In this document: positions 2,450 to 48,192 of the stretch, piece by piece
Layout: every line of letters starts with the position of its first letter
Numbering within the stretch: the first letter of the stretch is position 1
From: Setoptus koraiensis
Lineage: Eukaryota; Animalia; Arthropoda
Assembly (NCBI GenBank): GCA_048013815.1
Contig: CM106586.1
Location: 20,832,001 to 20,896,000 of the forward strand
Reading direction: 5' to 3'
Length of the DNA stretch: 64,000 nucleotides
Position numbers and translations under genes: made by a program
Notes under the pieces: generated by a model
The model's database searches: none
Told to the model about the DNA's origin: nothing
What the model saw: the letters and a program-made list of their open reading frames with translations, nothing else

Positions 2450-2644
2450 GGCTGTTTTTGCTTAGCTAATATTAATTAGCGTATCTACAGCAGAATTATA
2501 ACAATTTGACAATATGTTTGGTTTGTGTGAATATAAGACGATATATATGTGTATATATTTTATACGGCAATATTCTTGGGGCAATAATTATGTAAGTATA
2601 TGTATTGATGTTGTAAATATTTCTCTGTAGAGTTATAAATCGTA

Positions 2645-2928
2645 GAATGATGAAAGCTTTGCTGGCTAGTAGCGAACAAAGAGCACAAGGGGATAGAACG
2701 CTAGCGTGTGGATATCGTTCAATTGAGAACGCTATCGCACACACAAACGCACACACACACGGTCACAAGCTCGGAGGCCACAAGCGGTGACACTCGCACA
2801 GACAATCGTGCGACAGAGTACAAGTGATTGAGGGTACGCTTGTCTGTCTGTCTAGCAGGGCCACTGCACAACACAGTGTGTGTTGTCTGTGTGTCTAGAG
2901 TGTGAGTTACGCAAACACACGTACAGGG
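2645..2928. repeat. Upstream block shared with the TRIP12 5' region (copy 1)
   Basis: gaatgatgaaagcttt.ctgg..agtag.gaacaaagagc..ggggatagaa.g.tagcgtgtg...acggtcacaagct...cactcgcacagaca...tacaagtga...ggtacgcttgtctg matches 34759-35040 collinearly. Confidence 0.88.
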
Positions 2929-6233: not shown

Positions 6234-7007
6234 TCAGTCGAGATCAGATTCAAATGAACTATCGGCATTGGCGATGGCATGGGATGTCATGTATTCTTGA
6301 GCCTTTTGAAGGTCTAGCTTCAAAGCAAACATTACTATCTGGGTTGTAGCCTCTTTGAATAATACAGTTGATATATAATCGATGTCGTTCAATTTGATAA
6401 AATCGCCATCTTCCTCTGTCTTACAATAGAATTTGCCCTGCAGACAGCCTTGTATATAATCAACTTGAGCTCGTGAGAAGAGTGTAGTCTTGACATCTGA
6501 GTAAAGTTCCTGCATTGGTTTTCCTCTTTTTTTGTACTTGAGGAATTGTGTATGAATTTCACTCTCGACAGTGCCTTCTTTGACGCCCTTCAGATGTTGG
6601 AAGAATTTCACAGTTATTAAATATCTTAGTTGGTCCTCTGTTAAGTCTTTGACCTTTTTAATTCTTTTCAGCCGTCGCTCGAGATACTGACATTCTTGTT
6701 CAGTTAATTCTATCTTTCCTTCGTCTAATCCTCGATTGACAGTCGCTCCATTGGTGTGAACGGGTTCTCTCTGTTTTTGTTTCTTTCTAGTCTCTTTTCT
6801 TAGACATTGCTTCTTGTTGGGTGAACCTTCAGTTTCGTCTTTAATATTTTTTAGAACGCTCTCCTCGCATTTCTTAGCGCTCCTATCAATGGACGATAAT
6901 AGCTTCTTCTCTAGTTCTTGCAACGTTTTCATATTGATCCTTTTTTTGCTTGCCTCCTCCATATCTCGAGCCAATTTATTAAAGTCTATACTATCTATGG
7001 TTGCCAT
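6234..7007 (-). CDS. Hypothetical protein, 257 aa, Lys/Glu-rich N-terminal half
   Basis: ATG-initiated 774-nt ORF with protein-like composition in a genome where long ORFs are otherwise genes; no family recognised. Confidence 0.65.
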   Translation of the reverse strand: MATIDSIDFNKLARDMEEASKKRINMKTLQELEKKLLSSIDRSAKKCEESVLKNIKDETEGSPNKKQCLRKETRKKQKQREPVHTNGATVNRGLDEGKIELTEQECQYLERRLKRIKKVKDLTEDQLRYLITVKFFQHLKGVKEGTVESEIHTQFLKYKKRGKPMQELYSDVKTTLFSRAQVDYIQGCLQGKFYCKTEEDGDFIKLNDIDYISTVLFKEATTQIVMFALKLDLQKAQEYMTSHAIANADSSFESDLD

Positions 7008-7727
7008 GATTGCTTGTGATGTTACAGGTGAGCCAAGAATTATAAATTCAATTATTATGTGGTAAGAGCGAAAGAATATAGTGTGTAGCTCGGATAGTAA
7101 AAAGTATGTTTAGTGTAAGATTTATCTAGACTATAATGACGATTCTATGATTATTTTGAGGGAATTTACAATAAAGGAAGAATATGATGGCTTATGACTT
7201 TGGTAACATAGTGATGACGCCCTCGATTTCATTGTATTGATCCGATTCATGTACAACGGCTCTCTGTGCTTTAAAATGCATGCAAGAACGAAACAACAAC
7301 AAAAAAAGGTCACTTTCTGTGCCTGGTGTGGATCTTGTGTGCGTGTTTGGATCGGGCACGTAGAACATTTTAGTGTATGGTGTTTACAAACCTCTAGCTA
7401 GCCTCTGCAATGCTTCTCACATCCATGATGAACGAGGTGTGCTCTCTCGCAAATGAGCGTTCATGAGCGAGCACATTATCGTATGAGATGTTTATTTTTG
7501 AGACTAGAATATCACACACAGTATCATCGTACGATACAAGCGTATCATTTCTGAATCATCTGATCATTATTATCAACTAATATCATTTCTCATGTGTTCA
7601 ACAAGAATTTATCTTAATCCATTCACAGATTACATTGATTGTATTCCCCTCTTAATATAAACACTGTATATATTGAATAATTTATCAGGATACTAGGACA
7701 ACAACAAATAGCTCAAGCAACAACGTC

Positions 7728-8276
7728 ATGCAACCACAGCCAGCGCCTATTCCAAGTACCCCCCGACCGCAAGTCGTAACCCATAGTCGTAAGATACATG
7801 ATGCTTCACAACAACAGATTGGTCTTGGTGCAACATTTAATAGAACTAGGCCAGATAGGCGCTCATTTTCAGGTGCTGCCTTTGCTAGCGTATTCTTCGA
7901 GGGCAGGTATAGGACTTTGCGCGAATTGCACGGTTACACCTATAGTGGATTGAACGGAATCACCTCTTCGAATCTTCCTGGCGCCATTTTTCGATCATCA
8001 TTACCAGCAACACCCGTGGCAACTCCTATTCGTACTCAGCCTATGGTGCAATTTACTGAGCAAGCTATTCATAATAGATTGTGTGGCAACCAGAAATCTC
8101 CTATGACACTTCGCTCAATCTTCAATCAGACGCCCTCTAAATTTGCCCACCTACAATCTTCTCGTGCCAGAGACTTGGATTACAATGATGACACAGGCGA
8201 CATTGAGATGGATATTAACCAGAGAGCCTCTAGTTCCCCAGTTGAAATGGATTGCTCTAGTCAAAAAGATGGTTGA
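7728..8276 (+). CDS. Hypothetical low-complexity Ser/Pro/Thr-rich protein, 182 aa
   Basis: ATG-initiated ORF (caacgtcATG), divergent from the 6234-7007 gene; no family recognised. Confidence 0.55.
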   Translation: MQPQPAPIPSTPRPQVVTHSRKIHDASQQQIGLGATFNRTRPDRRSFSGAAFASVFFEGRYRTLRELHGYTYSGLNGITSSNLPGAIFRSSLPATPVATPIRTQPMVQFTEQAIHNRLCGNQKSPMTLRSIFNQTPSKFAHLQSSRARDLDYNDDTGDIEMDINQRASSSPVEMDCSSQKDG

Positions 8277-8394
8277 CAGTAACAGTAAAAGCGGAACAAC
8301 CTTGCGCAAATTGTAGGATGTACTGTATACTTAAAAGTGAACAATCAGCGAGAACTCAAAGTTCTTCGACCCACTTGGTGGATGAGTATTTTTC

Positions 8395-9425
8395 GAATGA
8401 TTTAACGCTTATTTTATCCTCAGAGCGGCGTTTTACATTTCAATAATTTCCTCGAGCTAACGCATGGTAGCCCTGACAGGCTCTGCCCCCGCGTACAACT
8501 GTACTTCACGTTTTCCTGTTGCTATTCAAATCAACTGTACAAATTTTTGTGTTTTGTCTATCTTTGCGACAGTTAACAGTTGCCGCGCAAGAGAATACGT
8601 GAGGCTGCACGCGAAGTTGCGTCAGAACAACACTAGAGCACTTGTGCGCTCTCATCTGTTTCGTTGCCCACGAGGGTAAATTGATAATAAAAGGAGACGA
8701 AAGAGTTGAAAGATTCAACTTGAAACATTTAGTGGAACACTCTATGCGTTCAGTTATGCATTTTAGCGCATTTTTGGCGCCCCAAGCGGATTTTCATTGA
8801 ACTGTGCTCATTGGCAATGGCAATTTAGCATTGAATGAGGGGGCTAGCATTTTGCACGAGGGGCTCGGCTTACACTAGAATGATTTGTGTCATGTGATCA
8901 TATTTCATTTTAGGTGCGCTCAGATACTGATGAACGGGATGAGAATGCGCACTAATAATGAAAAAGTGTGGCTCGCTGGTTGAGAAATGTGCAGATTGAA
9001 TGTAATGAGCATGTCGAGAGAAGAGCATGCCGATCAAAACGTCGTGTCGACCAGCATGTGCTGCCGACCAAAATGTAGGCACCGCTGATTATTGTATATT
9101 TGTTTACAGGCTAAGATTACCAGAATTTGCTTCAAAATGTTTCGCCAATTGAGTTGCTTATGGATGACCCCTTTGCGGTCCGGTAAGTATAGTACAATTC
9201 TTATAACTTTGAAAGTTCAACTATTAACGTGTAGACGAGTTTACCTAATAACCATGTTTTGTCTCCCTCATTCCGTCTTCCCACGATAGGTTTGAATGTC
9301 CACTTAGTTAAATCTAGCCACGAATTGCATCGCGTAACACCCTTGTTATCTCACTATGCCGGCAACAACGATGTATTCAAGCCCAACAGTTTGATTGCCC
9401 GTTTTTTCAATCAAGATATGACGCA
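8395..9425 (+). repeat. Segmental inverted duplication, copy 1 (promoter, exon 1, intron 1 and leader peptide; partner 18571-19690 on the minus strand)
   Basis: Collinear matches to the reverse complement of 18571-19690, e.g. tattttatcc..gagcggcgtt, gcccccgcgtacaactgtac, and exon 1 at 42/46 identity. Homology ends at atgacgca (9425). Confidence 0.95.
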
Positions 9426-10785
9426 GGGATGGCCGAAACCAATAATAGATTTCTTGAAGAGAGAAAATTTCACTGAGCCCACACTCATCCAAGAGAAGAC
9501 CCTACCGAAGACTATGGAGAAAAGAGATTTAGTCGGTATAGCTAGAACTGGTTCTGGAAAGACACTAGCTTTTGTCATCCCGGCAATCATGCATATTCTA
9601 GAGAAAAGACAGTCGTCCGAAGGGCGTCCATCATCACGTCAGCGAGATATCACTTGTCTTGTTCTGGCCCCAACTCGTGAATTGGCTAATCAAACGGCGG
9701 GTGTTGTTGCAAAATTTTCTACTATTAATTCACAAATCCTAGTCGGAGGACAGTCCAGGAATGTTCAGATAGACAACTTGAGAAGAATGGAGACAGACAT
9801 TGTTATAGCAACTCCAGGTAGGTTGATTGATCTGGTAGAAGACAAACAAATTGACCTTTCAAAAGTAACCTACTTAGTTCTTGATGAGGCAGACAGAATG
9901 TTGGACATGGGATTTGAGCCTCAAATTCGCTCTGTAATTAAAAATTTACCGGAGGAAAGGCAAACACTGATGTGGTCCGCAACGTGGCCAAAGGAGATAA
10001 AGAATTTGGCCGAGGATTTCATGAGGGATTATGACCACATCGCCATAGACGGTACTGAACTTAAAGCTAACCCTAATATTGAACAAATCGTGCAAGTTTG
10101 TCAGGGTTATGAAAAATTCGAAATAATGCTAGATTATATCAGAAAATTTGAAGCAGAAAATCCTGCTGTAAAGCCCAAGATACTGATATTTGCAGGTACA
10201 CAAAGGATGGTCGACCAGCTAGAATTTCAGCTGACGAAAAATTCCATTCGCGCCATATCGATGCATGGAAGACGCACTCAAATGCAAAGAGATAGAGCTT
10301 TAGAAAGTTTTAGAACAAACAGATGCCGCGTAATGGTAGCCACAGACGTCGCCGCCAGAGGCCTGGACATAAGTGATATAACGCATGTTTTCAATTATGA
10401 TTTCCCACAGACAATCGAAGACTATATCCATCGAATCGGGCGAACAGCTAGGCACTTGAATCACGGGAAGTCCGTCACTTTAATCACGGACAATGATTTT
10501 CACATTCTAGATGATCTTATCAAGGTCCTTGAGGAAACGAAACAGGAGGTACCAGCCGAACTTGCAAACTTACAATCAAGCAGTCAATCGTATCAGAGGC
10601 CTGCGAAGCGACAATATCAGAACCGTCGGTACCAGGGCCGACAATACTTCAATCAACAGTACCAGAACAGACAATATCAGGGTCGACAAAACGAGAACAG
10701 ACAATATCAGGGTCGACAAAACGAGAACAGACAATATCAGAGTCGAGATTACCAGTTCAGACAATACTCCGATGAATCGATGTAA
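9137..10785 (+). CDS. DEAD-box RNA helicase, DDX5/DDX17/Dbp2-like, with an N-terminal mitochondrial-type leader shared with OGDH (exon 1 9137-9182, intron 9183-9289, exon 2 9290-10785)
   Basis: Motifs FTEPTLIQ, GSGKT, PTRELA, TPGRL, DEAD, SAT, VAARGLDI and HRIGRTAR; TLMWSATWPKEI and LKANPNIEQIV resemble the DDX5 family. Donor G|gtaagt; in-frame acceptor cacgatag|GT. Confidence 0.9.
10630..10770 (+). repeat. Coding 15/30-bp tandem repeat (YQGRQ/NENRQ) in the helicase C-terminus
   Basis: gaacagacaatatcagggtcgacaaaacga occurs twice perfectly, with degenerate 15-bp flanking units. Confidence 0.9.
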
Positions 10786-11106
10786 ATGTAAAAGATTATA
10801 GTGAAATTTAATAAATGACTATGAAATCAAAATAAAGAATGATAGAAAATAAAAAATATTTTCTATGAACATTAATTGTTTACTTTAAGAAGCGCTATTA
10901 CTGTTAATGCGGCAGCAGCTGCTGCTGAGGCTGCTGTTGTTTTCTACTGCAGCGTTCGATTGCGGCCCAAGAGGGTTCGAACCTAAAACCGAACGCAGCG
11001 AAATGCGAACAGCAGAGACAAGTGTGACGCAATCATTTTGACTGTATATAGCAGTCAAATGGAGGTAACGGAGCTATAGACACATTTATGTTATAAATAC
11101 AAATAG

Positions 11107-14583
<3,477 letters not shown>

Positions 14584-15671
14584 GATAAGTTGTAAATTGA
14601 TCCAAGAGTATCAACGTAATAAAATTATTTTTGTTGAAAGTTAAATGAAAAAGAATATTTACAAAAAAGCCACCGTAGCAACTCATACAACCCTCAAAAT
14701 ACAGTCGTATAGAGTTGGTATAGAGTGAGCGCCAAACTTTTGCATTTTGATGGTTTTGTGGGTGCTGCGATGTTTCGGGGTCACGCGAACGACTTTTTTA
14801 ACTTTTTTTTCTTTATTCTGTAAAGGAAGAGTTCCCCCATCGATCTGGAAAGCTCTCTTTGGTGCACGCCGGGGTTTTCTTAGCGATAATCGCGTTCGAA
14901 AAAAAAAGTTCGCTGAAAAGTGTTATAAGGAAAAAGGGGACGCATCACCGGAAGTTGGAGAGTCATGTCACATCGACTGTCGAACTATGAAATTCACATG
15001 CCTCCCTGAAAAAGTTGAAAAAGGAAACATCGAAGATGGAACACATCCTTTGAGTATGGACTGTCCTATACTGTACCCTTATTAAAACGGTTTTAACATA
15101 CAGATTGGTCCATATCCGAATTCGATATAGGCTCTATCATCATCATCTTTTTCAGATTACATTTCATTGGTGCAATCTTTGCAAATATTTCCTGCTTTCT
15201 TGTAGATCCCGAAGAACATTTAACATCGAATCAGTCTAATTAGTTGTTATCTAATGAGTAGTTGTGCAATAATGAGCAAATATCATCTGAGAGAGGTAAG
15301 CCAATAGAATTTAATCATGAGGTTTACCGGTCCTCTCGATCAAGACGGCCGCGATCAGTTTCATTGCTTTCATCTCAGGGCTTAAAACACTTAATTACAT
15401 ATCGAGAAGGTCCAATATTATCGCTGGACGGTTTGTCGAGTTGATTTGACAACTAATAGACTCAAAGACTCATCATCACAGCAAAACAGTAGCTTGAATA
15501 TTATCAATCTTTTAAAGATAAAATATCAAGACGAGAAATAGTTTTATGCATGATGGACAAGAGTGAGTTAAAATCTTTTATTCAATTTCATAGAATTCTT
15601 TCAATTTCTAACATGAGACATAAGCTCCATATAGAAGTTTTTCGTATATATTGATAACTATTCATTTCTTA

Positions 15672-18600
15672 TTACAGATCCATGGTTTCATCGAGCATTT
15701 TCTTGTATTCATTCAGATGCACGCGTTTACTGCCAGTAGCCGTAGATGCTGAGACTGGCCGACCGGCGTATTTTAGGGATTTGTTGAGATCCAGATGATT
15801 GATGACACAGTCAAAGTGGGGCCATAAAAATGACCAATATCCTTGGTTTTTATGCTCTTCCTGCGCCCAACATATTTCTTGAGCGTCTCCGTATTTCAAC
15901 AGTTCTTCCTTGACAAGATCGAACGGGAAGGGCGCTAACTGCTCTAAACGAATGATCGCAATTTCGTTTTCCAAATTTCTTGTTGCACGCTCTTTGGCTA
16001 TATCATAGTAAACTTTTCCGGAGCAGAATATAACTTTTTTCACTCGATTAGCTTGTTTTTCACACTCTGGATCGGGTATGAGACGTTTAAAATGAGTACC
16101 TTCAGTTATTTCATCAAAATTGGATCGAACGTCAGGATGACGTAAAAGAGATTTCGGAGTGAAAACGATGAGCGGTTTTCTGAATGGCAATGCCACCTGG
16201 CGTCTCAGCACGTGAAATATGTTAGCAGGAGTTGAACAATTAACAATTAGCATGTTTGTGTCGTGTAATTGATGCATTGCGAAGTTTTCATCCATATCCG
16301 GCATCTTGTCATAGCATGAATTTGTCAGCTGCAAAAATCTTTCTGGTCTTGCACTTGAATGCTCTGGTCCCATGCCTTCCATACCATGAGGCAGCAGCAT
16401 AACTAAGCCACTTTGTCGCACCCACTTAGCTTGGCCACTGCTAACAAATTGATCGATTATACATTGAGCTGTATTCATGAAGTCGCCAAACTGAGCCTCC
16501 CATATGACTAAGGCATTCGGATTTGTCATAGAGAAGCCCAATTCGAATCCTAAAACACCATACTCCGATAGAGAACTATTGCTTACAGTGTAAGGTGCTT
16601 GATCGGGCCATAAATGACATAGTGGTCGGTACGTGGTTTTGTCAATCGTTTGATGGTGGAGAACATGATGTCTATGACTGAATGTTCCTCTTTCAACATC
16701 TTGTCCACTCAGTCTAACATGAGTGCCTTCTTTAAGTAGTGATCCGAAGGCCATAGCTTCCGCTAGAGCCCAATCGAATTTTCTAGATGAAACCATGTCC
16801 ATTCTAGATTTTAAGACCCTTCTCAAACCTGGATGAATATTAAAATTGCCTGGAGGGGGTGAGCTGAATACCCGTCCAACGTGATCTAGTATGCTCTCTT
16901 TGACTCCGGTAGGAGGACACACATACTGGTCTCTAGTATCAAAGAAACCCTTCCAAGGTGAATCGAGCCAATCTTTGTTGAAGAAGGTTGTGTCGCTCTC
17001 TGCGTTTTTATAGGCCTCTTGTAGAATATTTTCGTATTTGTTCTTAACATCTTCTATCTCTTCTTTGTCGACAATACCCTCATCTAATAATTTCTTTGAA
17101 TACTTATCCATGACAGGTACTTGTTTTCTTATTTTGGTGTACATAATCGGTTGGGTGAACATGGGTTCATCAACCTCATTGTGTCCATTGCGACGATAAC
17201 AGACTAAATCAATAACACAGTCCTTTCCAAATCTTTCTCTCCATTCTGCAGCAACATTGCATACGTGGACGACCGCTTCAGGATCATCTGAATTAACATG
17301 AAATATAGGTGCACCAACGACACGAGCTACGTCAGTACAGTACGGAGATGATCTAGCAACACGTGGGTCTGTGGTGAAACCGATTTGGTTGTTAACGATG
17401 ATGTGTATAGTTCCATGTGTTGAATAATCCGGAAGGTCACTCAAGTGAAATGTTTCATAAACGACTCCTTGGCCTGAACAGGCAGCGTCACCGTGTAACA
17501 ATATACTCATGACCTTTTTACCTTGGACATCGCCTCGATAAAATTGTTCTGCTCTGGTCTTTCCTTGAACCACGGGATCAACAGCTTCTAAATGGGAGGG
17601 GTTCGCAACAACCGACAGTTTTATGTTCTTGTTGGTCACACGGTTAACTCGCTCAAGACACAAACCTAAATGATATTTCACGTCGCCTGACCCTTCGTCT
17701 GCTGGTGCAAGTCCACTAAATTGCGCAAAAATATCCTCAAGCGGTTTACGACACACATTCGCAATGACGTTGAGTCTACCTCTATGAGGCATACCCATGT
17801 TGAAACTTTCAACGCCCAATTCACTAGATCTATCTATTACTGTTTTCATTGCCGGTATCAACACTTCACAACCTTCAAGTCCGAAACGTTTCTCTGATGA
17901 CCATTTTTTAGCTAAAAATTCTTCAAATTTGTGAGACCTCACCAATCTTGCTAGCAGAACGCGCTTCTGTTCTTTCGTCAAGTCTGCGATTCCAGGTGTT
18001 TCGAAATGTTCCTTCAGCCAGAACAATTGCTCTGGACTACTAATGAACATATATTCAACACCAATGGTTGAACAATAAGCGTTTTCCAGTCGTTTCAATA
18101 TTTCTTGCAATGTTAGTACAGACTGATTACCGCCGATATAAGTGCTCTCAGGTAATTTAAAGTTCCTAAACATATCTTCGTTTTTCAATTTGAAATGTCG
18201 CAAAACAATCTCCGGTTTATTGGGCAGACCATCTTTTACTGGTGAGTATATATTAGCTGGTTTTAAATTTAACGGATCTAGGTTGGCAGCTAAATGTCCG
18301 CGCATTTGATAGGCCCGAATGATAGCCTGCACTGAAAGATGATCATCGATCTCTCTCAGGCCAGATATATCGTCGCCTTCTTGATGGTGAGTTTTGGTTC
18401 TCTGATGTAAAGATTGCTGCAATTGCTGTTGCTGATTTAGCGTCGAGTCTAGTTCCTCGTCTTGCTCCTCATTTCTAAAGTATTCGTCCCATGATTTGTG
18501 TACGGAGCTAGGATCGGCGAGCCACAATCTGTACATTTCCTCAACGTAAACTAATGATGACCCGTTAACTTGCGTCATCTCCCGACTGAACATACGGGTA

Positions 18601-18859
18601 ATCAAACTGTTGGGCTTGAATACATCGTTGTTGCCGGCATGGTGAGATAACAAGGGTGTTATGCGATGCAATTCGTGTCGAGATTTAGTTAAATGGGCAT
18701 TTAAACCTATTATAGGAAGACGGAATGAGGAAGACAAAACATGGTTATTAGGTAAACTCGTCTACACGTTGATAGTTGAACTTTCAAAGCAATAAAAATT
18801 GTACTATACTTACTGGACCGCAAAGGGGTCATCCCTAGGCAGCTCAATTGGCGAAACAT
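15672..18859 (-). CDS. OGDH: 2-oxoglutarate dehydrogenase E1 component, mitochondrial (exon 1 18859-18814, intron 18813-18707, exon 2 18706-15672)
   Basis: [85 protein letters not shown]. Donor A|gtaagt; in-frame acceptor cctataatag|GT. Confidence 0.96.
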
Positions 18860-19690
18860 TTTCAAGCAAATTCTTGTAATCTGAGCCCGTGAACAAATAT
18901 ATAATAATCAGTAATAATTTATTTAAATAACCTAAAACCAATGACAACAAGGTTGTTCACTCATTGATAGAGACTGTACTGAATGAGTAATACTGTGCGA
19001 GTAGGTCATTCGAGGGATTTTTCATAATTAGTGCGCATTCTCACCTAACTTCTCAGTGCCATTTATCAGCATCTGAGCGCACTTAAAATGAAATATGGTC
19101 ACATGACACAGATCATTCTAGTGTGAATCGAGCCCCCCCGTACAAGATGCTAGCCCCCTCTTTCAATGCCAAATTGCCATTGCCAATGCGCACAGTTCAA
19201 CATAAATCCGCTAGGGGCGCTAATAACGCGCTAAAATACATAACTGAACGCACACAGTGTTCCGCTAAATGTTTCAAGTTGAATCTTTCAACTCTTTCGT
19301 CTCCCTTTATTATCAACTCACCCTTGTGTGCAGATAAACAGATGAGAGCGCACAACTGCTCAAGTGTATTTCTGACGCAACTTCGCATGCAGTCTCACGT
19401 ATTCTGTCGCACAACAGCTGCAAACACACAAACACACAGACGCACAACGCACTAACGTTTATACAGTTGGCTCAAAAAGCAACAGGATAACGTGTACAGT
19501 TGTACGCGGGGGCAAAATCCGATGCAGCCCCTACGCGTCAGCGAGTCTCAACAAATATTCACTGTGATTGCACACTGAACGCACGCAGCACACATGCCAC
19601 AAGCAGTAATCTCGTAGAAAGCGCGTAAGTTGGCGGAAATAATTGAAATTTGTAACGCCGCTCAACGGATAAAATAGTCGTTGGATCACA
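18571..19690 (-). repeat. Segmental inverted duplication, copy 2 (partner 8395-9425)
   Basis: See copy 1. Contains the OGDH promoter, exon 1, the 107-nt intron and the leader; about 90 bp extra near 19530-19620. Confidence 0.95.
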
Positions 19691-20229
19691 GAAAAATTTT
19701 TTGACCGCTCACAAGTTGTCAGTGCGCCGTAAACCTCACTCCGAGTTCGTAGTCTTGCTGTCTATTCACTACGGCGTATGCAGTGCACTGCCAATAATTT
19801 ATGCGGTTCCAATCTCACAATCTTGTCAGAAGAATTCCCATTTTATTCATGTCAAAAACTGCCATATCACAGTTACATGAGGTCATTAGTCACCATGAGT
19901 ACACCAGAAACTTGACTATTTCTAGGTATCCTTTGCTAATAATTTAGCTAAGACCAATGAACCCGTTTGAAGATCAGCTTGCTCCTGATATCGACAATAG
20001 ATTATGTAACACAATTTGTGTCAGATTGTTCAAACTACGCGCCGTCTATTCTCACGCCATGTCTTATTTTCATGACATGTAGACATGCAGAAAGAATTCA
20101 ACACCTGCACGTGTCGCTACTACTTTCCAAAACGGACTTCATCGGTGCTCAATGAAGTGTCCAATTTATTTAGCAAACAGAAAATAATAGTTAGTTAACT
20201 GTTTCAATCGAATGGTAACAACTGAAGCT

Positions 20230-20827
20230 ATGCCTAAGTTTGCATTGGAAGTGAACTGTAGACTGGAGAATGTCACCGACCTCAAGCCTGGTGATACAGA
20301 CGATCATGATTACAGATTCAAATTCTTGTGTTCTAATTGCGGAGAAAAGTCCCTGACGTGGCAAACAGTCAATTTAAATGTAAGTTTCCAACTAGTTGAA
20401 GTGTGAAATATGATTAAATTGTTTCAAAATACACCCTGTGTGACTCATTAATGTGCAAAACATTTCTATTCTACCACTTTCATGATAGAACAAATATGAA
20501 TCTGAGGGCAGTCGAGGTGAAGCTAACTACTCGGCCAAATGTAAGAACTGTTCTAGACAGCAGACATTAACCATGATAGAGGGATCTTCACAAGCCTATA
20601 CAGACCTTGACAGCGAAAAATTTAAAGCTATACTTGTGATTGATTGTCGAGGAATGGAACCTATCGACTACAGTCCAACTAATGACATGGTATGCCAATC
20701 AACACAGTCATCAAAACTATTTCAATCTGTTAATCTTGAAGACGGCGATTGGGTAGATTATGATGATACCGCCAATGTCTCTGTCGGTATTTATGACATC
20801 GAAAGTCGTTTTGTCAAAATAAAGTAA
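20230..20827 (+). CDS. CZIB: CXXC motif-containing zinc-binding protein (C1orf123/DUF866) (exon 1 20230-20379, intron 20380-20488, exon 2 20489-20827)
   Basis: MPKFALEVNCRLENVTDL...CSNCGE...|NKYESEGSRGEANYSAKCKNCSR...DCRGMEPIDY...DWVDYDD...VGIYD matches the family pattern; phase-0 GT-AG intron. Confidence 0.88.
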
Positions 20828-22277
20828 CGACGGATGCACATGCGTGGAAGTGCGAGCGTGTTGCAATATAGCGTTTACCTTCTATAGGTGAGGCACCATA
20901 GCCACAATGACGAAATGATAACTCTGGAAATGAGCCACACCCTCGGTGTAGGATGTAACATCTCAAAGGCTCGGTACTTTGAAACTTTCTAGTTCAGCAC
21001 GCATTCTCTGGAGAGGCCATATATGAGTTGGTAAAAGGTTACGCGAGTCCACTGGTACTTGTCGCTTTTGTTCTCTCGGTCCAAAATCGAATCTTTCTGT
21101 GATCGAAATTTCTTCAGTTTTCAATTTGAAAGTTCGTCCGGCGATCTCTCATCTGTAGGCTATTTCTTTGAGATAGCTGATTTTAAACTCAATGGATTCA
21201 GATGTCGAGCTCTTGTTAGTAGAGAGACAACCATTGATCTATCCCCATGACTAGGATCTTGCTGAACATATTTTAGCGATTGTAGAACCACTTAAAGGCC
21301 ATATTTACATCACTCGAGCGACAGCTCGACAATTCCGTTTTGTGTGGGTGTTACAATCAACTAATTTCAATTCCACCATGAGATTGTTACGAATGAGCTA
21401 CGATGCATATCGCGCTGGGCACACACCCATCATTACACCTTATTCGCTGTCTTTTTGTCTTCAATCGGGCCGTAGTTAGAAGTGGGTATCCTCGGATATC
21501 TATTGAATTCAACGGATGTCCATGGGCATCTCTATTCATTCATGTTTATTCAAGAGATTCAAACGACGAATATCACATATGAATAGTCATTTCGTGGATA
21601 CTGAGCCCGAGGGTTATTCATGCTATCCACATTCATACATTGTAACTGACCGTTAGTGCCTGTGTCAACGGTCTCCATATCAAAATTTGTACGAATTGTT
21701 TTCATGTTATCAAATGTTATTGCAGCGAGTATGAGAGGAACATGCAAGGGAGCGCCATATTGCTCTTTATTAAATCATCTGCATACAATCATGTCATTGT
21801 GCAACAATCTGAATTTCACAGCTTTCGCGTTTTACAAGGCGTTAACAACGCCTCTAGTTTTGCTTCGAATTTAGAGTTATTTGTAGTGAAAAGAGAATAA
21901 AATGGTAAAATGGTTGATATTCACCACGCGATTGGTCAGCATTTCCGTTTACACCCGTCTTGTGATAAATACTCAGATGAATATTCATCAAGTATCCACT
22001 CATGAACTATTCATCAATTAAAAATATTCGAATCTCGCGCACATTTCTTCTGAGATAATGTGCTTCGTTTCAATGTTCTGTACTGACACACACCTCATAT
22101 TGAATAGTTGAATAATATTACTGATATCATGTATTATTTCATTAATCAAATATATATTGATTTACAAAAGCAACAGAATTAATAATAGCAACAATAGTAG
22201 GAGCTATAGCAACAAAAATCACACTGACAATAACAAGACCGAACCAGTCGACTCGTTTTTCTCAGGAAAGTTTCAAG

Positions 22278-24655
22278 ATGGGCAAATTTATACCTATCAT
22301 AAAAAAGGATAATGTAGCAGACTATTTACCTGAAATTGAACCAGACGATGCAATATTGGAATGCCCCTCATTAGTGACGCCATTACTCATCATGAAAGCC
22401 AACATTTGGCCTCCCAAAGCTCCGCCTGAGGACGAAGGGTCGGCAAAAGAGACTGTTGCGCAAAATGAACAGCAAGTACAACAAGAACCTACAAGCAAAA
22501 TTACAAATAGCCTTGTAAGAGCTACCACAGTGGCCAGTCTAACAAACCCTCACCAGATTAAGCCCATACTGGCCATACCTGACTATCATAGATCATCTGC
22601 AGGATCTTTTCTTATTGGTCTAGGAGTCAGTAGAGCAAATGAATGGATTATCAAAGATAACATCAGAAAAACCAAGCGTGCTATCAGAAAAGAAGAGAAT
22701 TGCTCTGATTTCATCGCAGAGCTCGAACGTCTAAATGATCAGTTGCGCCAAACTGTAACTAACAACAAGCCTTTTACTTTTTCGTTGATCAAATGTCCGC
22801 GCTGTGAGTTTAAAACAGAATCTCCAGTTGTTCTAGAAGGTCATATGAACTATCCTCACGTAACTCCTAAACGCGAGTATACGTGCAATTGGTGCGTTTT
22901 TAAAACCAAAGACGCTAAACAAATGACTTTCCATAATCATCTCACTCATAGGAGAAGATGCTATATTGACCCACCAATGCAATTGCATGAGTGTCCTTAT
23001 TGTCCTTATGAGTCGAATTCGAAGGCAAAATCTTTGTCTCACATAGCTAGGTGTTTGAAAACATTTTCAGAATCTAGGAATCAAGCAACATTAGATGAAA
23101 CAGATTATCCCGCCGTGACTTCAAAACCTATCAACAAAGAAGACGTAAAGATTTACGAAGAAACTCTTCAAGCCATCCGATTAGCTGCCTATAATCCAAA
23201 TCAACATATGTTACCTGGTCACTCATTGCAATCTGGACCTCAGAAACTGCTTGTTGTTCCAAGAGCAACGGTCAATAATCACAGCTTTATTTCAACAAGT
23301 AATGCTGACGGATTACTGAGCCAGAATGTTGGAAGTGTCTCAAATGGAGAACCATTTCGTATCATTGGAGGGAAGATAGGTCAAAATGTTGCAACTTACT
23401 TGTCTAAAAACTATCCTAGGAGGCCTCCATCCAATTCTGTTCCAATCATCAGTTCCTGTAAGTATGAGTCTGCTACTCTTTTACTAAATTTTTTACCTGA
23501 TATAATGACTGACTTAATCATTGTTGTCCACCCCCTATCACAGTGCCTGGATCGTCGGCGCAGTTATTACAAATGTTCGCACCTAGCAAAAATACTATCA
23601 ATAAAAGTGGCAACCTTAACATTCTACAGCATCCTAGGGTCAAACCATCTAATTTCAATAATGCCAGGTCCTTGTTGAATGCCAATGCATCACTAATGAT
23701 GCCTCCCAAGAGTAGCATCATAAATGACCAAATGAGCTTAGCTAGAAAAGTTCCATACAATTCTAAATCATCACAGAATCTGAAAGAAACCATGTTAATA
23801 AAACAGAATACTAATGATCCAACGGCGCCTGTGAATTTTATGAACAGCAATATACACCTATCAGCTTCGAAGAGCGCTACATTCGTCATTTGTGAGATTT
23901 GTGACGGCTATATCAAAGATCTTGAGCAATTGAAGACTCACATGCAATGGATTCATAAGGTAAGGGTGAAGTTCTAACTGCTAACATAAAACATTTGAAG
24001 AAGTGTCCATTCTGATGATTATTTATCCACCACCCTTCGACTACCATATAGGTGAAAATACATCAGAAGATGCTAGAGTCTCGACCGCCTTTGAACTGTC
24101 AAAAGTGTCAATGGAGGTTCTTCACCGATCAAGGTTTAGAACGTCACTTATTGGGGGCTCATGGATTAGTAACCTCCAACATGCAGGAACAAGTAGAACA
24201 AAATACAGACTCTGGACGGTGTACCGTGTGTGGTAGAGCTTATGCTAACAAATTAGTCCAACACATGAAAGAGGTAACTATTTGACCTGTACATTCAACC
24301 TGTACGCTACACAATAATTGACTCGAACATGAGTTTTGACACTTCTTCTTCATTACTCTTACATCATGTATCATCTTAGGTGCACAAATCGAACCTCAAG
24401 CCAGCTCACCTCTCGTACAAGTGTACAGTATGCTCAGCAACTTTCAACTTGTATAGATTATTTGAAAATCACGTGTACAGTGTTCATAGCGACAGTGTAA
24501 AGCGATCAAGCAACGAAACTGAGGTTAAAAATCCAACAGCCACCAAAAAAACAAAAGTTGATTTTTCAAAGAATGCGTCCGTGGCCGCGGTAAATGCCGT
24601 TATTGCTGACCGCCAAAACGATGCAAATAGTAATAACATTCAAGCTACTGTTTAG
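22278..24655 (+). CDS. MEP-1: C2H2 zinc-finger protein MEP-1 homolog (NuRD/Mec-associated); exons 22278-23457, 23544-23959, 24052-24273, 24380-24655
   Basis: ICEICDGYIKDLEQLKTHMQWIHK|VKIH...RPPLNCQKCQWRFFTDQGLERHLLGAHGLVTS...KPAHLSYKCTVC matches insect MEP-1 as recalled. Three frame-preserving GT-AG introns. An acceptor (ttctcag) just before the ATG suggests further upstream exons. Confidence 0.85.
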
Positions 24656-25013
24656 CTGTGATGACAATGAATCTTTGAGTATATTAATTGTTAAATCAAC
24701 TCGACGAAGTCCCAATCGATAATGTTAGACCTTCTCAATATGTGATTTTAGGCCAATGTAATGAAATTAACGAGATTGATTGCGGCTATCTTGTTCAAGG
24801 GGATCGCTTCATCGAATCTTTGTTGTCAAGTCGCCGTGGAAACTATATGATTAAATTTTATTCGCTTGTGTGTCTCAGATCATATCAAACACTTTGATTG
24901 CGAACATTTCTTCATTATTGCATAAGTACTCAGTACCATACAACCGATTTGATTTTGCTGACATAGTAATCGCAACACAAATATAAACGTACCTCGAATC
25001 ATGCTGATTATCA

Positions 25014-34485: not shown

Positions 34486-34758
34486 GAAGAGCGTCGTGCA
34501 GCCCTTATTTCAAATGTTTTATAGATAATAATATATGAGGATATCATAGATATTGTATACTATCATAAAGATATATTATTTGCAATATTATTTATATATT
34601 TATACATATACAGAATTCTATCCAATATGTTCAGCTAGTGCATATGTAGATATATATTATGTATATATATATTCTACAGTATTATATCTATGTTTGTATG
34701 TATATATATATATAATAATAATATTATAAATATGTGTATATGTATATCGTACGACGAA

Positions 34759-35040
34759 GAATGATGAAAGCTTTCCTGGTGAGTAGTGAACAAAGAGCAA
34801 GGGGGATAGAATGTTAGCGTGTGTAGTATTGGAAACGCACTCGCACACACACACACACAGACGGTCACAAGCTTAAAGCCCACAAATCAAAACACTCGCA
34901 CAGACAAACACATGAAAGAGTACGCTACTATACAAGTGACTTTAGGTACGCTTGTCTGCTTGTGCGTCAATAGCACACTAGTAAGCCAGGTCTGTTAGTC
35001 TGTGTATGTTGGTCTAAAGTGTTAGTTACACACATAGGGT
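34759..35040. repeat. Upstream block shared with the V-ATPase E 5' region (copy 2)
   Basis: Same orientation and similar position relative to a minus-strand ATG as 2645-2928. Confidence 0.88.
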
Positions 35041-38637: not shown

Positions 38638-39006
38638 TAAAGTAAGCGCGAATCAATTAGCATGTTAATCAAGAGATGCAAGAAACCTATCATGTCAAAC
38701 AGATAAACTTCGATTAAAATTGAAACTTCTCATGATGGTATTAATCTAGCATTGTATACATTTCTCAAGTCATCTTTTCTAGTTGCGATCTAGTCGACGG
38801 TGTTGAACATCATTATCCACCATAATCAGATTGCTCTGATTTATTTTGCTTACATTGCCATAAGTTCGAAACCCGATATTTGTTGTCAACTGACACCTGT
38901 ATGATGTTTATTCACCACGTATGCTATGTAAAGGCTGACGTGACCAGCTGATTTGCTCATAAATTTTAGGAGATTCATCTAAATCAAAATACACCCGTGT
39001 GATAAA

Positions 39007-39585
39007 GGGGGTATCGACTTTTCGGAGCAGAAAAATCGAGATTTCCCAATTTTAAGTCTCCTACACGGTAGGTCATGCCAGACATGATGGCGGAATTTAT
39101 TTCCGGAACTGACCACCAGGTAGTGTTATATCGGAAAAAGAATGCGCCCAGTTAGTACACGGATATACTACAGCAGCGCGCACTTTTTCGCACTTTTCTC
39201 CAAACTTGAAATCACTCACTATTTGCGGTATTTCTCTCTAACTGTTGAACCCAAGAGCATGAATTTTTCACACGATATACTCTAGGGCGGCCTCTATCGT
39301 CTGAACTAAAATCAATTGCAAATTCGCACCCAATCGCTCACACTGTGCATACAAAAGCGCTGACTCATAGAGTGCATATAGGAACGAATAGTGAGCGATT
39401 TCATGTTTGGAGATAAGTGCGCGCTGCCACAGTATATCCGCGTAACTGTACGCGTTCTTCCACAGGTGTACCTGGTGGTCAGTTCCGGAAACAAATTTCG
39501 CCATCATGTCTGGCATGACCCACCGTGTAAGAGACTCAAAATAGCAAAATCTCGATTTTTCCACCCCAAAAAGTCGGAAAGCCCC
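39007..39585. mobile_element. Non-autonomous foldback element (MITE-like) with ~200-bp imperfect inverted arms
   Basis: Arms at ~39007-39225 and ~39385-39585. Two perfect 22-bp inverted pairs (39071-39092/39499-39520 and 39101-39122/39469-39490). Termini GGGG...CCCC flanked by taaa/ttaa. Confidence 0.85.
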
Positions 39586-40333
39586 TTAAGTAATTGGACA
39601 GTGGGAAGAAATTAATGCCTCTTCCCTGAGCGCAGAACATAGAAAAGCCAGGACTGCGCACGAGGGGTAGGCAGTATTTTTTTCCGACTGTTCAAAGACT
39701 TAATCATACGGGTGTAGAATAAAATACAACTACCTGTTGAGAGCGTATCCTTGAAGAGAGCTCACGATTTGCTACACGTTTCAACTCACAATGACGCCAT
39801 CAGTCCAATAAAACTAATCCAAATTTCAAGACATTAGAAAAAAGAAGCAAGATTCTCCTAGTTCGTCGAATAAGAATTATTAGATCGTAGGGGGGTTACG
39901 AACGTAGATCTTTATATAAGCTGAAAATAAAAAAAAAAAGTGTCAACTATTTACAATATGGTTGGTTGATTGGTTGGTTTTTTGGTCCTGCCGAATGCAC
40001 TGTCAAGACTAGCACTCACAGGAGCGCAATCTGCTTTTATAGCCTCCGCAACGCATTTGGCAGGTCGGCGTGTCTGCCAAAAAACGCTTCTGGGCATGCG
40101 CAAGGCCTAGAAAAGACCAAAATATTCCAGAAACGAAAAATAGAACGGGTAAACGTTTATCCGGTTCGGACTCAACTCGCCGAGATCTACAAGAATAGAC
40201 CCACTAGAAGAAAATCTGAGAATTTATACTCCCTAGGTTACTCTGTTAGTGAAATAACAGAATAATTTGAGATTTTGAACCACAGATTTGATCTCTCAAG
40301 TAACTTGACTTTGGAAGACGATAATCACTTCTC

Positions 40334-47214: not shown

Positions 47215-48192
47215 CTACATCTCAAAATCAATGTACTTTGAGTCGAACCTATGCACACGGACGTAACCGTCCTCTCCGCCACTCGCATATCCATAACCAT
47301 CAGGGTGAAATGCAAGAGAATTGATTGGACCGAAATGACCTTTTACACGAGCAAATTCTTCTTCATATATCATGTGGAAAAATCTAGCTTCAAATTTACC
47401 AGACTGCGTTGCTGTTGTCGTGACCTCCATCGCCTCTTGACCACCTCCCACAACCACATGTTCTCTGATAGGCGATATGGCAGCGGAATTTACTGGCCTG
47501 TCTGTCTGGTATGTTTTTAGTTTATCCAGTGTTTCCATATCGAACAATTTGGCTGTTCTATCTTTGCTTGCAGTTATAAACATGGTGCAATCTTGGCTCG
47601 CTTGTAAATCAGTTAATGCTGAAGAGTGAGCTTGAGGACTAACAACAAGTTGCTCACCTGGATTTCTTATATCCCATTTAATCAGAGTTCCAGACTCGTT
47701 ACCTGTTACAAATGTTCTGTCTAAAGGTCCCCAAAGAGAACAGGTCGGTTTCTCTTTTTTCTCTAGTTCATGCTTGAATGCTGCGTTGTCCTCGTGTAGA
47801 TGTGAAGGGTCATTAATGTCTATAATAACTAATTTGGGGTTGACATTCATGGTACTATCCGTTGTATAAAGGACTTGTTTTCCTGAGAAGCTGAAAGAAC
47901 AACTCCTGGTTGCATTTTTGGTTTCAACCCTAGAAATTAGTTTGCCTGTTTCGGCGTCCCAAATAAATAAAGCCTCAGAACCGGCACCGATGACCGTTGT
48001 TGTGGAATAGTCGACGTCAATCGACCAGACTACACCGTTCGGTACTGAGTAATTGCCGATACGTTGTCCTGTTTGAGAATACCACACACTTGGAATAGTA
48101 TCCTTAGCAGCACTAAAAATCAGATCTCCGTCGGCATTGAATCGAATTTTCGTTATAGCTCTGGTGTGACCGTGTAGAGCTAGAGGCTTCAT
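47215..48192 (-). CDS. EIF3I: Eukaryotic translation initiation factor 3 subunit I (WD40); CDS intronless, with a 5'UTR intron at 48305-48221
   Basis: MKPLALHGHTRAITKIRFNADGDLIF...DRPVNSAAISP..HVVVGGGQEAMEVTTT...FEARFFH..EEEFARVKGHFGPINSLAFHPDG..YASGGEDGYVRVH. Confidence 0.95.
   Translation of the reverse strand: MKPLALHGHTRAITKIRFNADGDLIFSAAKDTIPSVWYSQTGQRIGNYSVPNGVVWSIDVDYSTTTVIGAGSEALFIWDAETGKLISRVETKNATRSCSFSFSGKQVLYTTDSTMNVNPKLVIIDINDPSHLHEDNAAFKHELEKKEKPTCSLWGPLDRTFVTGNESGTLIKWDIRNPGEQLVVSPQAHSSALTDLQASQDCTMFITASKDRTAKLFDMETLDKLKTYQTDRPVNSAAISPIREHVVVGGGQEAMEVTTTATQSGKFEARFFHMIYEEEFARVKGHFGPINSLAFHPDGYGYASGGEDGYVRVHRFDSKYIDFEM

What the first reader, a model, noticed from the sequence alone, without database searches (positions are those of the whole stretch)
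8395..10785. DDX5-like helicase carries the same promoter, exon 1, intron 1 and mitochondrial-type leader as OGDH
Seen: 8395-9425 is an inverted copy of 18571-19690. Both genes have a 46-nt exon 1 (42/46 identical), a 107-nt phase-1 intron and a 61-aa leader (49/61 identical; MFRQLSCL(W/G)MTPLRS..). Homology stops at MTQ. In OGDH that is immediately before the conserved NG.S..YVEEMY start of the mature enzyme. In the helicase it is immediately before the Q-motif, where the aromatic residue normally ~17-18 residues upstream of the motif's Phe is absent. Known: DDX5/Dbp2 helicases are nuclear; OGDH needs an Arg/Ser/Leu-rich presequence. Inference: a chimeric gene in which a p68-type helicase was retargeted to mitochondria and co-regulated with OGDH by 5'-end capture. 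Direction OGDH to helicase is favoured but unproven.
Basis: partly seen in the sequence, partly recalled or inferred. Interest (0 to 1): 0.88.

Follow-up and report, generated by a model that had tools for sequence, protein, structure and literature searches.

The report
OGDH borrowed a mitochondrial helicase's 5' end
In this eriophyoid-mite genome about 1 kb (upstream DNA, first exon, intron and a 61-residue mitochondrial-type leader) is shared by a DEAD-box helicase and the Krebs-cycle enzyme OGDH, but the leader belongs to the helicase family and OGDH is the gene that copied it.

Summary
Window 8395-9425 (+) is an inverted copy of 18571-19690 (-) at 87-92% identity. Both genes have a 46-nt exon 1 (42/46), a 107-nt GT..AG phase-1 intron and a 61-aa leader (49/61). 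Homology stops exactly at MTQ.

One gene is a 5'-capture chimera, but it is OGDH, not the helicase.
- **Helicase clade.** The helicase sits in a 100/100-supported clade of 42 DDX5-derived helicases. Its sister is the Fragariocoptes setiger paralogue.
- **Leader is ancestral.** Full-length clade members share M(F/L)R.L N-termini and a conserved block, R.FS.EMTA|DWPE.IK.FL.KE.I..PT.IQEKTLP. The duplication breakpoint lies inside this block.
- **OGDH orthologues differ.** All 113 OGDH orthologues examined, including about 20 from eriophyoids, have unrelated leaders.
- **Cleavage motif.** R.F(S/G/N/T), in 35/39 clade members, is an R-3-type presequence cleavage motif.

An independent DNA run holds both copies at equal depth. 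One contig from another run shows the helicase-type leader with the 107-nt intron removed.

Use of the captured exon by OGDH mRNA was not shown. Import was not tested.

Other unchecked notes from this scan report many similar 5'-end captures elsewhere in this genome.

The parts
8395..8965 (+). Non-coding upstream block of the helicase gene, copied to 19018-19690 (weaker similarity out to about 8309/19797); presumed distal promoter or enhancer
   Evidence: 81.8-87% identity; stops in all frames and no codon periodicity of the differences; no Rfam family
8966..9084 (+). 119-nt stretch with no counterpart in the OGDH copy (106 unrelated nt at 18912-19017)
   Evidence: read laying joint 'skips 106, 119 letters between'
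9085..9136 (+). Proximal promoter and short 5'UTR of the helicase (TATATTT at 9094-9100); the spliced contig starts near 9115
   Evidence: 46/52 identical to 18860-18911; X8 contig record 17 begins 22 nt upstream of the ATG
9137..9182 (+). Helicase exon 1, 46 nt, encoding [15 protein letters not shown] plus 1 nt
   Evidence: the N-terminus matches the clade consensus M(F/L)R(H/N/Q)L
9183..9289 (+). Helicase intron 1, 107 nt, phase 1, GT..AG; shown removed in one contig
   Evidence: X8 record 17 with helicase-type letters skips exactly 107 nt and runs on into the helicase body
9290..9425 (+). Rest of the 61-aa leader (..ARFFNQDMTQ) with the R-3-type motif RFFN; end of the duplicated segment
9426..10785 (+). 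DEAD-box helicase core, motifs Q, I, Ia, Ib, II (DEAD), III (SAT), IV, V, VI all present, plus an R/Q/Y-rich tail (15-nt repeats at 10605-10776)
   Evidence: Pfam DEAD 1.2e-48 and Helicase_C 1.3e-30; motifs; best PDB matches DDX17 1e-102 and Dbp2 4e-95; repeats
18571..18706 (-). OGDH: captured leader part of exon 2 (..[10 protein letters not shown]), fused in frame to [13 protein letters not shown]
   Evidence: closer to the clade consensus R.FS.EMT than the helicase's own copy
18707..18813 (-). OGDH: captured intron, 107 nt, GT..AG intact, 99/107 identical to the helicase intron
   Evidence: splicing of this copy not shown
18814..18859 (-). OGDH: captured exon 1 encoding [15 protein letters not shown] plus 1 nt
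18860..19690 (-). OGDH: captured 5'UTR/proximal promoter (18860-18911), unrelated 106 nt (18912-19017), then the captured upstream block with an ~88-nt insertion
15672..18570 (-). Mature 2-oxoglutarate dehydrogenase E1, 79% identical to Fragariocoptes setiger OGDH
   Evidence: Pfam 2-oxogl_dehyd_N, E1_dh, Transket_pyr, OxoGdeHyase_C; homologues

Best explanation
The helicase at 9137-10785 belongs to an old DDX5/DDX17-derived paralogue clade; its only named member is from an eriophyoid mite. Members of this clade carry an N-terminal mitochondrial-type presequence ending in an R-x-F-(S/G/N/T) cleavage motif. It is therefore most likely a mitochondrial matrix RNA helicase whose leader is native to it. 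In the lineage of this genome, about 1.0-1.4 kb of the helicase's 5' end was duplicated in inverted orientation about 9 kb away. The piece comprised the intergenic upstream DNA, core promoter, 5'UTR, exon 1, the 107-nt intron and codons 16-61. It fused in frame to OGDH exactly where the mature enzyme begins, replacing OGDH's own promoter-proximal region and presequence. OGDH is now presumably transcribed from a helicase-type promoter, spliced at the copied intron and imported with a helicase-type presequence. If cleavage occurs at TRMF|S, only about 6 helicase-derived residues (SREMTQ) remain on the mature enzyme. Shown: the duplication, its extent, the in-frame junction, donor versus recipient, both copies present in independent DNA, and a spliced helicase-type contig carrying the leader. 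Inferred: mitochondrial import, the cleavage site, use of the captured exon by OGDH mRNA, and co-regulation.
For: Duplication and anatomy. Donor is the helicase: all full-length top homologues (P0002-P0040, P0044; 50-59% identity) carry 35-80-aa leaders starting M(F/L)(R/K)(H/N/Q)L. They carry the block R.FS.EMTA|DWPE.IK.FL.KE.I..PT.IQEKTLP, and the breakpoint lies inside it. The tree gives a 100/100 clade of 42 with the window helicase sister to F. setiger P0012 (98/83), while F. setiger's canonical DDX5 (P0049) sits in the other clade. In F. setiger and in metagenome genomic contigs the leader and helicase form one uninterrupted ORF. OGDH orthologues (113, about 20 of them eriophyoid) have unrelated leaders. 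HMM of helicase-orthologue leaders: window helicase 24.8 bits, window OGDH 20.3, best other OGDH 6.4, and the best of 2000 composition-preserving shuffles reaches 19.8. Presequence features: 92% of clade leaders have at most one acidic residue in the first 30 aa and a net charge of +3 or more, the same as true OGDH presequences (96%/92%) and unlike canonical DDX5 N-termini (52%/73%). R.[FYLI][STAGN] occurs 7-10 residues before WP in 35/39. The OGDH copy is intact: ATG, GT..AG and an open frame over 61 codons despite 21 substitutions, dN/dS 0.49. A contig in X8 carries helicase-type letters, lacks the 107-nt intron and runs on into the helicase body, whereas DNA run X1 (depth about 115) shows no such joint. 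Both copies are at equal depth in X1 and both junctions are bridged.
Against: No contig in X5, X7 or X8 covers the OGDH-type leader; OGDH contigs stop at 18388/18458. Use of the captured exon 1 by OGDH is therefore not demonstrated. No dedicated predictor (TargetP, MitoFates) or import assay was available. The conserved R.FS.EMT block could owe part of its conservation to the helicase fold (the region just before the Q motif) rather than to cleavage. dN/dS rests on only 7 synonymous and 14 non-synonymous changes. Most clade members are unnamed metagenome or Logan proteins, so 'eriophyoid-specific' rests on one named species plus the absence of high-scoring hits from other sequenced mites. The sister F. 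setiger leader has lost the R.FS motif.
Confidence: 0.78

Rival explanations
1. One reading: the leader is OGDH's native presequence and a nuclear p68-type helicase captured it, becoming retargeted to mitochondria.
For: OGDH is an obligate matrix enzyme that needs a presequence, and canonical DDX5/Dbp2 are nuclear (established knowledge). Homology ends just before OGDH's conserved mature start.
Against: Helicase orthologues 50-59% identical already carry a homologous leader and the motif spanning the breakpoint. None of 113 OGDH orthologues has anything similar; the best scores 6.4 bits against 20-25 bits for the window leaders. The two copies are about 90% identical in DNA, so the event is far younger than the helicase clade.
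Confidence: 0.03
2. The copy in front of OGDH is an unused relic. OGDH is transcribed from another promoter or first exon, or translated from an internal Met, so the shared module has no role in OGDH expression or import.
For: No transcript evidence for the OGDH-type exon 1 or splice in the one read-laying run available. The intron and upstream DNA are as conserved as the coding leader, which is compatible with near-neutral decay.
Against: The junction is in frame. The ATG, both splice sites and 61 codons remain open after about 10% divergence, and dN/dS is 0.49. No other N-terminal extension is visible: the ORF upstream of MTQ consists only of the copied leader. Every OGDH orthologue has a presequence. 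An upstream mini-ORF at about 19850 read by eye would be out of frame with the acceptor.
Confidence: 0.12
3. Assembly artefact: a mis-joined or duplicated helicase 5' end was placed in front of OGDH.
For: Short repeats can be misplaced. In X1 the repeat interior is covered only by 151-553-nt unitigs.
Against: The copies differ at about 10% of sites. In an independent sample (X1) both types occur at equal depth. A 7.9-kb contig carries the OGDH body plus 58 nt of OGDH-type leader with several diagnostic letters, and a 7.0-kb contig bridges the distal end.
Confidence: 0.02
4. The leader is not a mitochondrial presequence, for example another targeting signal or a helicase-specific N-terminal extension.
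For: Import was not tested. Conservation of S.EMTADWP could be structural. The protein-atlas search on residues 1-90 of orthologue P0005 returned only DEAD-box helicase clusters, nothing bearing on targeting.
Against: Composition and the R-3 motif match true OGDH presequences. If OGDH uses it as its only N-terminal extension, it must be import-competent (inference).
Confidence: 0.1

Closest known systems
Chimeric genes formed by partial duplication that capture a neighbour's promoter and 5' exons (described in Drosophila and rice; my own knowledge, and PMC3673630 by title and abstract only)
   Same: DNA-level copy of promoter, first exon and intron fused in frame to another gene; the parent gene is kept intact nearby.
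   Different: The recipient here is not a new duplicate but what looks like the essential OGDH gene, with no second copy seen. Its own 5' end was replaced. The duplication is inverted and lies 9 kb away rather than in tandem.
Borrowed mitochondrial presequences of plant genes transferred from the mitochondrion to the nucleus (rice rps11 with atp2/coxVb-type presequences, rps14 within sdh2; my own knowledge, not checked here)
   Same: A presequence, with its intron, is re-used from another nuclear gene for a mitochondrial protein.
   Different: Those genes had no presequence before. OGDH already had one and swapped it. This case is in an animal, and the promoter was copied too.
DDX5/DDX17/Dbp2 (p68/p72) DEAD-box helicases
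   Same: Best sequence matches (DDX17 1e-102, Dbp2 4e-95); all core motifs present; low-complexity Arg-rich C-terminal tail.
   Different: Forms a separate, long-stemmed clade beside canonical DDX5, which F. setiger also has. The N-terminal region before the Q motif is replaced by a presequence-like leader. The tail is RQY-rich rather than RGG.
Known mitochondrial DEAD-box helicases (yeast Mss116, human DDX28, plant PMH1/PMH2; my own knowledge)
   Same: The presumed working analogy: a nuclear-encoded DEAD-box helicase imported through an N-terminal presequence to act on mitochondrial RNA or ribosome assembly.
   Different: Not a member of these families by sequence: Mss116 is not among the 60 best PDB matches, while DDX17, Dbp2 and DDX3X are. 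This looks like an independent recruitment from the DDX5 lineage.
Change of mitochondrial targeting after duplication, e.g. GLUD2 (PMC2478720) and relocalised human paralogues (PMC2790464); both cited by title and abstract only
   Same: Paralogues differing in N-terminal targeting information.
   Different: Those cases evolve by point substitutions or alternative starts, not by wholesale replacement of the 5' module.

Membership tests
DEAD-box RNA helicase (superfamily 2) | Motifs Q, I (AxTGSGKT), Ia (PTRELA), Ib (TPGR), II (DEAD), III (SAT), IV, V (ARGLD), VI (HRIGRTAR) in order | tested here: met
   All found at residues 79, 100, 143, 190, 214, 245, 314, 371 and 396; Pfam DEAD and Helicase_C
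DDX5/DDX17/Dbp2 subfamily | Closest to DDX5/17/Dbp2 among DEAD-box proteins | tested here: met
   PDB phmmer: DDX17 347.7 bits, Dbp2 322.6, next DDX3X 266; database names DDX5/DDX17/DBP2
DDX5/DDX17/Dbp2 subfamily | Orthology: groups with the species' canonical DDX5 rather than beside it | tested here: not met
   Separate 100/100 clade of 42 with stem length 0.67. F. setiger has both a clade member (P0012) and a canonical DDX5 (P0049). It is a paralogue lineage.
DDX5/DDX17/Dbp2 subfamily | Canonical N-terminal segment with an aromatic residue 4-5 residues before (F)P upstream of the Q motif | tested here: not met
   Clade has ..R.FS.EMTADWP..; M/E stand at the canonical aromatic positions
Cleavable mitochondrial matrix presequence | N-terminal, 20-60+ aa, net positive, nearly free of acidic residues | tested here: met
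   Window leaders: one acidic residue in the first 30 aa, net charge +3/+4, first acidic residue at position 27. The clade matches the OGDH positive controls
Cleavable mitochondrial matrix presequence | R-2/R-3 processing motif, R-x-(F/Y/L)-(S/A) (MPP plus Icp55; established knowledge) | tested here: met
   RFFN (helicase) and RMFS (OGDH copy); 35/39 clade members at a fixed distance from WP
Cleavable mitochondrial matrix presequence | Amphipathic helix | tested here: inconclusive
   Maximum hydrophobic moment over 11-residue windows: 0.59 (helicase) and 0.44 (OGDH copy), against medians of 0.63 for OGDH controls and 0.58 for canonical DDX5. The measure does not discriminate
Cleavable mitochondrial matrix presequence | Directs import and is cleaved | not testable with these tools
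   Needs localisation or N-terminomics
5'-capture chimeric gene (recipient = OGDH) | Copied segment is contiguous with orthologue-conserved sequence in the donor but not in the recipient | tested here: met
   The breakpoint lies inside the helicase clade's conserved block; OGDH orthologues align only downstream of it
5'-capture chimeric gene (recipient = OGDH) | In-frame fusion with start codon and splice sites intact | tested here: met
5'-capture chimeric gene (recipient = OGDH) | The chimeric transcript is made | tested here: inconclusive
   Only a helicase-type spliced contig was found; the OGDH 5' end is not covered in the low-depth runs X5, X7 and X8, whose kind is unrecorded
Mss116 / DDX28-type mitochondrial helicases | Sequence membership | tested here: not met
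   Not among the 60 best PDB matches at E below 1e-48

The most novel reading that the evidence does not exclude
This is one instance of a genome-wide process in this streamlined mite genome. Genes would repeatedly replace their promoter, 5'UTR and first codons with inverted or direct copies of a neighbour's 5' module, so that presequences of mitochondrial proteins are swapped wholesale. Examples would be OGDH from the helicase here, and POLG from OPA3 according to another unchecked note. That would make local 5'-module duplication a major route of promoter turnover after genome compaction. The OGDH chimera would also serve as a natural import assay showing that eriophyoid mites recruited a DDX5 paralogue as a mitochondrial RNA helicase.
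Probability: 0.3. Interest if true: 0.8.

Novelty: new member of a known kind. Interest (0 to 1): 0.55.

Why it matters
It corrects the direction of the event: an essential Krebs-cycle enzyme, not a helicase, had its promoter and targeting peptide replaced by a copy from a gene 9 kb away. This is a clean animal example of presequence and promoter swapping at the DNA level, with the donor kept next door and the breakpoint mapped to the codon. If OGDH really relies on the copied leader, nature has already done the reporter experiment showing that the helicase leader imports proteins into mitochondria. That in turn would define a previously undescribed, mite-specific mitochondrial DEAD-box helicase derived from the nuclear DDX5 lineage. 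Together with unchecked notes of similar captures elsewhere in this genome, it points to a testable question: how do extremely compacted genomes renew promoters?

Tried and rejected
- **Rfam** on 7000-21000 at E up to 1: only a chance miRNA-like hit at 10893-10954. No RNA gene explains the conserved upstream block.
- **Coding potential of the upstream block:** stops in every frame in at least one copy and no 3-nt periodicity of differences. Rejected as a hidden gene.
- **Synteny with F. setiger:** helicase and OGDH lie on different contigs with unrelated neighbours, so no ancestral arrangement could be inferred.
- **JGI metagenome contigs** searched for the spliced exon1-exon2 junction of either copy: no match.
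- **The protein-atlas search** on an orthologue's first 90 residues: only generic DEAD-box hits, nothing on targeting.
- **Earlier scan notes** searched for a second OGDH or a canonical DDX5 in this genome: none found, which proves nothing.
- **Literature:** the two eriophyoid genome papers found do not mention helicases, promoters, or inverted or chimeric duplications of this kind.
- **Hydrophobic-moment test:** did not separate controls.
- **Possible upstream acceptor:** 'ttgtttacag' at 9100-9109 was considered as a 5'UTR-intron acceptor. The AG is not conserved in the OGDH copy and the spliced contig starts at about 9115, so a TATA-proximal start is more likely. Unresolved.
Full report
**1. 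The observation**

The repeat is real and far beyond chance. The repeat finder reports inverted arms 9085-9425/18571-18911 (341 nt, 90%), 8572-8863/19134-19425 (292 nt, 87%) and 8860-8937/19059-19136 (78 nt, 88%). A blastn self-comparison joins them into 8484-8965/19018-19514 (E 1e-139) and 9085-9425/18571-18911 (E 1e-130). The pairwise alignment shows weaker similarity out to about 8309/19797, which is most of the intergenic DNA upstream of the helicase.

Gene models read from the sequence:

| Feature | Helicase (+) | OGDH (-) |
|---|---|---|
| ATG | 9137 | 18859 |
| Exon 1 (46 nt) | 9137-9182 | 18859-18814 |
| Intron (107 nt, GTAAGT..ATAG, phase 1) | 9183-9289 | 18813-18707 |
| Exon 2 | from 9290, stop at 10785 | 18706-15672 |

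Identities:

| Segment | Identity |
|---|---|
| Exon 1 | 42/46 |
| Intron | 99/107 |
| Leader part of exon 2 | 120/136 |
| 52 nt before the ATG | 46/52 |
| Upstream block | 86.6% |
| Leader protein | 49/61 aa |

Homology stops at MTQ. After it the helicase continues GWPKPIIDFLKRENFTEPTLIQ and OGDH continues [13 protein letters not shown].

**2. What the genes are**

The helicase ORF has the Pfam domains DEAD (1.2e-48) and Helicase_C (1.3e-30). The other gene has the four OGDH E1 domains. All nine DEAD-box motifs are present. The best solved-structure matches are DDX17 (1e-102) and Dbp2 (4e-95), then DDX3X; Mss116 is not among the best 60.

The nearest OGDH proteins come from eriophyoid mites: Fragariocoptes setiger at 79% and Aceria tosichella at 75%. 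Both genes are nearly intronless, as expected for that group (PMC7738191, abstract). The window therefore comes from an eriophyoid-type mite.

**3. Whose leader is it?**

- **Homologues carry the leader.** The helicase's best homologues (P0002-P0040 and P0044, 50-59% identical, 421-532 bits) score clearly above canonical DDX5/17 (about 360-390 bits).
- **Shared leader features.** Every full-length member has a 35-80-residue N-terminal leader. It starts M(F/L)(R/K)(H/N/Q)L, for example MFRHILKL, MFKHLIKV and MFRQLAIL, against MFRQLSCL here.
- **Conserved block.** The leaders end in R.FS.EMTA|DWPE.IK.FL.KE.I..PT.IQEKTLP.
- **Breakpoint position.** The duplication breakpoint (MTQ|GWP) lies in the middle of that block. 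The helicase is colinear with its orthologues on both sides of the breakpoint.
- **OGDH orthologues.** These align only from (N)(G/A)SS.VY(V/I)EEMY onward. Their leaders are all different.

An HMM was built from 38 orthologue leaders, with no window sequence included. Its scores:

| Sequence | Bits |
|---|---|
| Window helicase leader | 24.8 |
| Window OGDH leader | 20.3 |
| Best of 113 other OGDH leaders | 6.4 |
| Best of 2000 shuffles of the OGDH leader | 19.8 |
| Next best shuffle | 14.3 |

A maximum-likelihood tree gives a 100/100 clade of 42 leader-bearing helicases. The window protein is sister to F. setiger P0012 (98/83). F. setiger's canonical DDX5 (P0049) sits with the other mites' DDX5 in the other clade.

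In F. setiger and in metagenome contigs of another member (P0005), the leader and helicase form one uninterrupted ORF on genomic DNA.

The two copies in this window are about 90% identical in DNA, so the event is much younger than the clade. The donor is therefore the helicase and the recipient is OGDH. The OGDH copy (RMFSREMTQ) is closer to the clade consensus R.FS.EMT than the helicase's present sequence (RFFNQDMTQ). This fits a snapshot of the helicase leader taken at the time of copying.

**4. Is the leader a mitochondrial presequence?**

No dedicated predictor was available, so I compared simple features with controls.

| Group | At most one acidic residue in first 30 aa | Net charge +3 or more | Median position of first acidic residue |
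|---|---|---|---|
| Helicase-clade leaders | 92% | 92% | 28 |
| 113 OGDH presequences | 96% | 92% | 21 |
| 75 canonical DDX5/17 N-termini | 52% | 73% | 11 |

R-x-(F/Y/L/I)-(S/T/A/G/N) occurs 7-10 residues before WP in 35 of 39 clade members. The script counted 34; P0009's RYFS was missed because of an earlier WP. This is the R-3 form of the matrix processing motif (established knowledge: MPP cleavage plus Icp55 trimming).

The hydrophobic-moment measure did not discriminate between groups.

One further argument is by inference. OGDH is an obligate matrix enzyme. If the helicase-type leader is its only N-terminal extension, the leader must be import-competent.

**5. Reality in DNA and RNA**

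- **DNA run X1.** This run comes from a different sample and study than the presumed source. OGDH-type contigs with 0 differences chain from 17800 to 19990. A 7919-nt contig carries the OGDH body plus 58 nt of OGDH-type leader, and a 7041-nt contig bridges the distal end. Helicase-type contigs (13-26 differences) lie at similar depth (92-117 against 108-123). This is not a collapse or a mis-join.
- **Run X8.** A 531-nt contig (depth 12.6) carries helicase-type letters, skips exactly the 107-nt intron and continues into the helicase body. Its loose end is the reverse complement of 9426-9455. It starts about 22 nt upstream of the ATG. X1 shows no such joint, so this is a spliced helicase transcript that includes the leader.
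- **What is missing.** No contig in X5, X7 or X8 covers the OGDH-type leader. Their OGDH contigs stop at 18388 and 18458. Use of the captured exon by OGDH is therefore not shown.

**6. State of the OGDH copy**

The ATG, both splice sites and the 61-codon frame are intact after 21 substitutions (7 synonymous, 14 non-synonymous). dN/dS is 0.49, with dS 0.21. The intron (7.5% divergent) and the upstream block (13%) have diverged about as much as the coding leader, so constraint on the leader is weak, as is usual for presequences. The upstream block is non-coding and matches no Rfam family.

**7. Context**

F. setiger has the helicase and OGDH on different contigs with unrelated neighbours. The present helicase, kinase and OGDH arrangement and the capture are therefore lineage-specific as far as can be seen.

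Other unchecked notes of this scan list many 5'-end captures in the same genome: POLG/OPA3, MPND/Fip1, URM1, DCTN5/TAF3 and PABP. Within this window a self-blast finds further non-coding paralogous pieces at 74-87% identity near gene ends:

- 2641-2846 and 34755-34958
- 39005-39223 and 39387-39587
- 15328-15512 and 24625-24806
- 48301-48353 and 48620-48672

These are leads for a general process, not evidence.

**8. Verdict**

- **Observation:** confirmed.
- **Interpretation:** partly supported. A 5'-capture chimera exists, but it is OGDH.
- **The helicase's leader:** native to a previously undescribed DDX5-derived clade, probably mitochondrial.
- **Kind of event:** known (chimeric genes by partial duplication; borrowed presequences in plants). 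This instance is new and unusually clean.
- **Interest:** moderate. It would be higher if the genome-wide pattern holds.

Noticed in passing
window 48190-48790: Short inverted repeats (66 nt at 80%, 53 nt at 87%, 40 nt at 80%) lie between the head-to-head eIF3i-like gene (ATG at 48192, minus strand) and the Rpt3/PSMC4-like gene (ORF from 48962). This is the place of another first-reader note about a shared 5' end. The similarity is much weaker than in the helicase/OGDH pair.
   Followed up: partly
window 2641-2846 and 34755-34958: Direct 74% similarity over about 210 nt between two upstream regions 32 kb apart. It is CA-rich and matches another first-reader note on V-ATPase E and TRIP12.
   Followed up: no
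window 15328-15512 and 24625-24806: Inverted 76% similarity over about 190 nt. One copy lies just downstream of the OGDH stop, in the tail-to-tail spacer with the kinase gene. It may be a dispersed non-coding module or a small repeat family.
   Followed up: no
window 39005-39223 and 39387-39587: A 77-86% inverted repeat of about 200 nt with a spacer of about 160 nt: a palindromic intergenic structure.
   Followed up: no
window 8455-8610 (helicase upstream block): Run X8, which holds the spliced helicase contig, also holds a 172-nt helicase-type contig (depth 6.7) in the far-upstream block. Run X5 holds an unspliced helicase-type contig that runs from intron 1 through the whole upstream region into the neighbouring gene. 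This may be an upstream transcript, read-through or DNA in those libraries; it is unexplained.
   Followed up: no
window 10605-10776: The helicase C-terminus is a run of 15-nt (5-aa) repeats encoding (N/G)RQYQ units. Orthologues instead have RGY-, DRGY- or acidic low-complexity tails, so the tail is rapidly evolving.
   Followed up: partly
window 8673-8730 / 19270-19330: The longest perfectly conserved stretch of the non-coding upstream block (GGAGACGAAAGAGTTGAAAGATTCAACTTGAAACATTTAG) contains a short palindrome, AGTTGAA-AGA-TTCAACT. It is a candidate transcription-factor site.
   Followed up: no
L001 10001-11368 and L003/L004 6001-7533: Helicase-clade orthologues in F. setiger and in a metagenome-derived compact eukaryotic genome are single-exon. 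The 107-nt intron after codon 15 is therefore either a retained ancestral intron or a gain in the window's lineage.
   Followed up: partly
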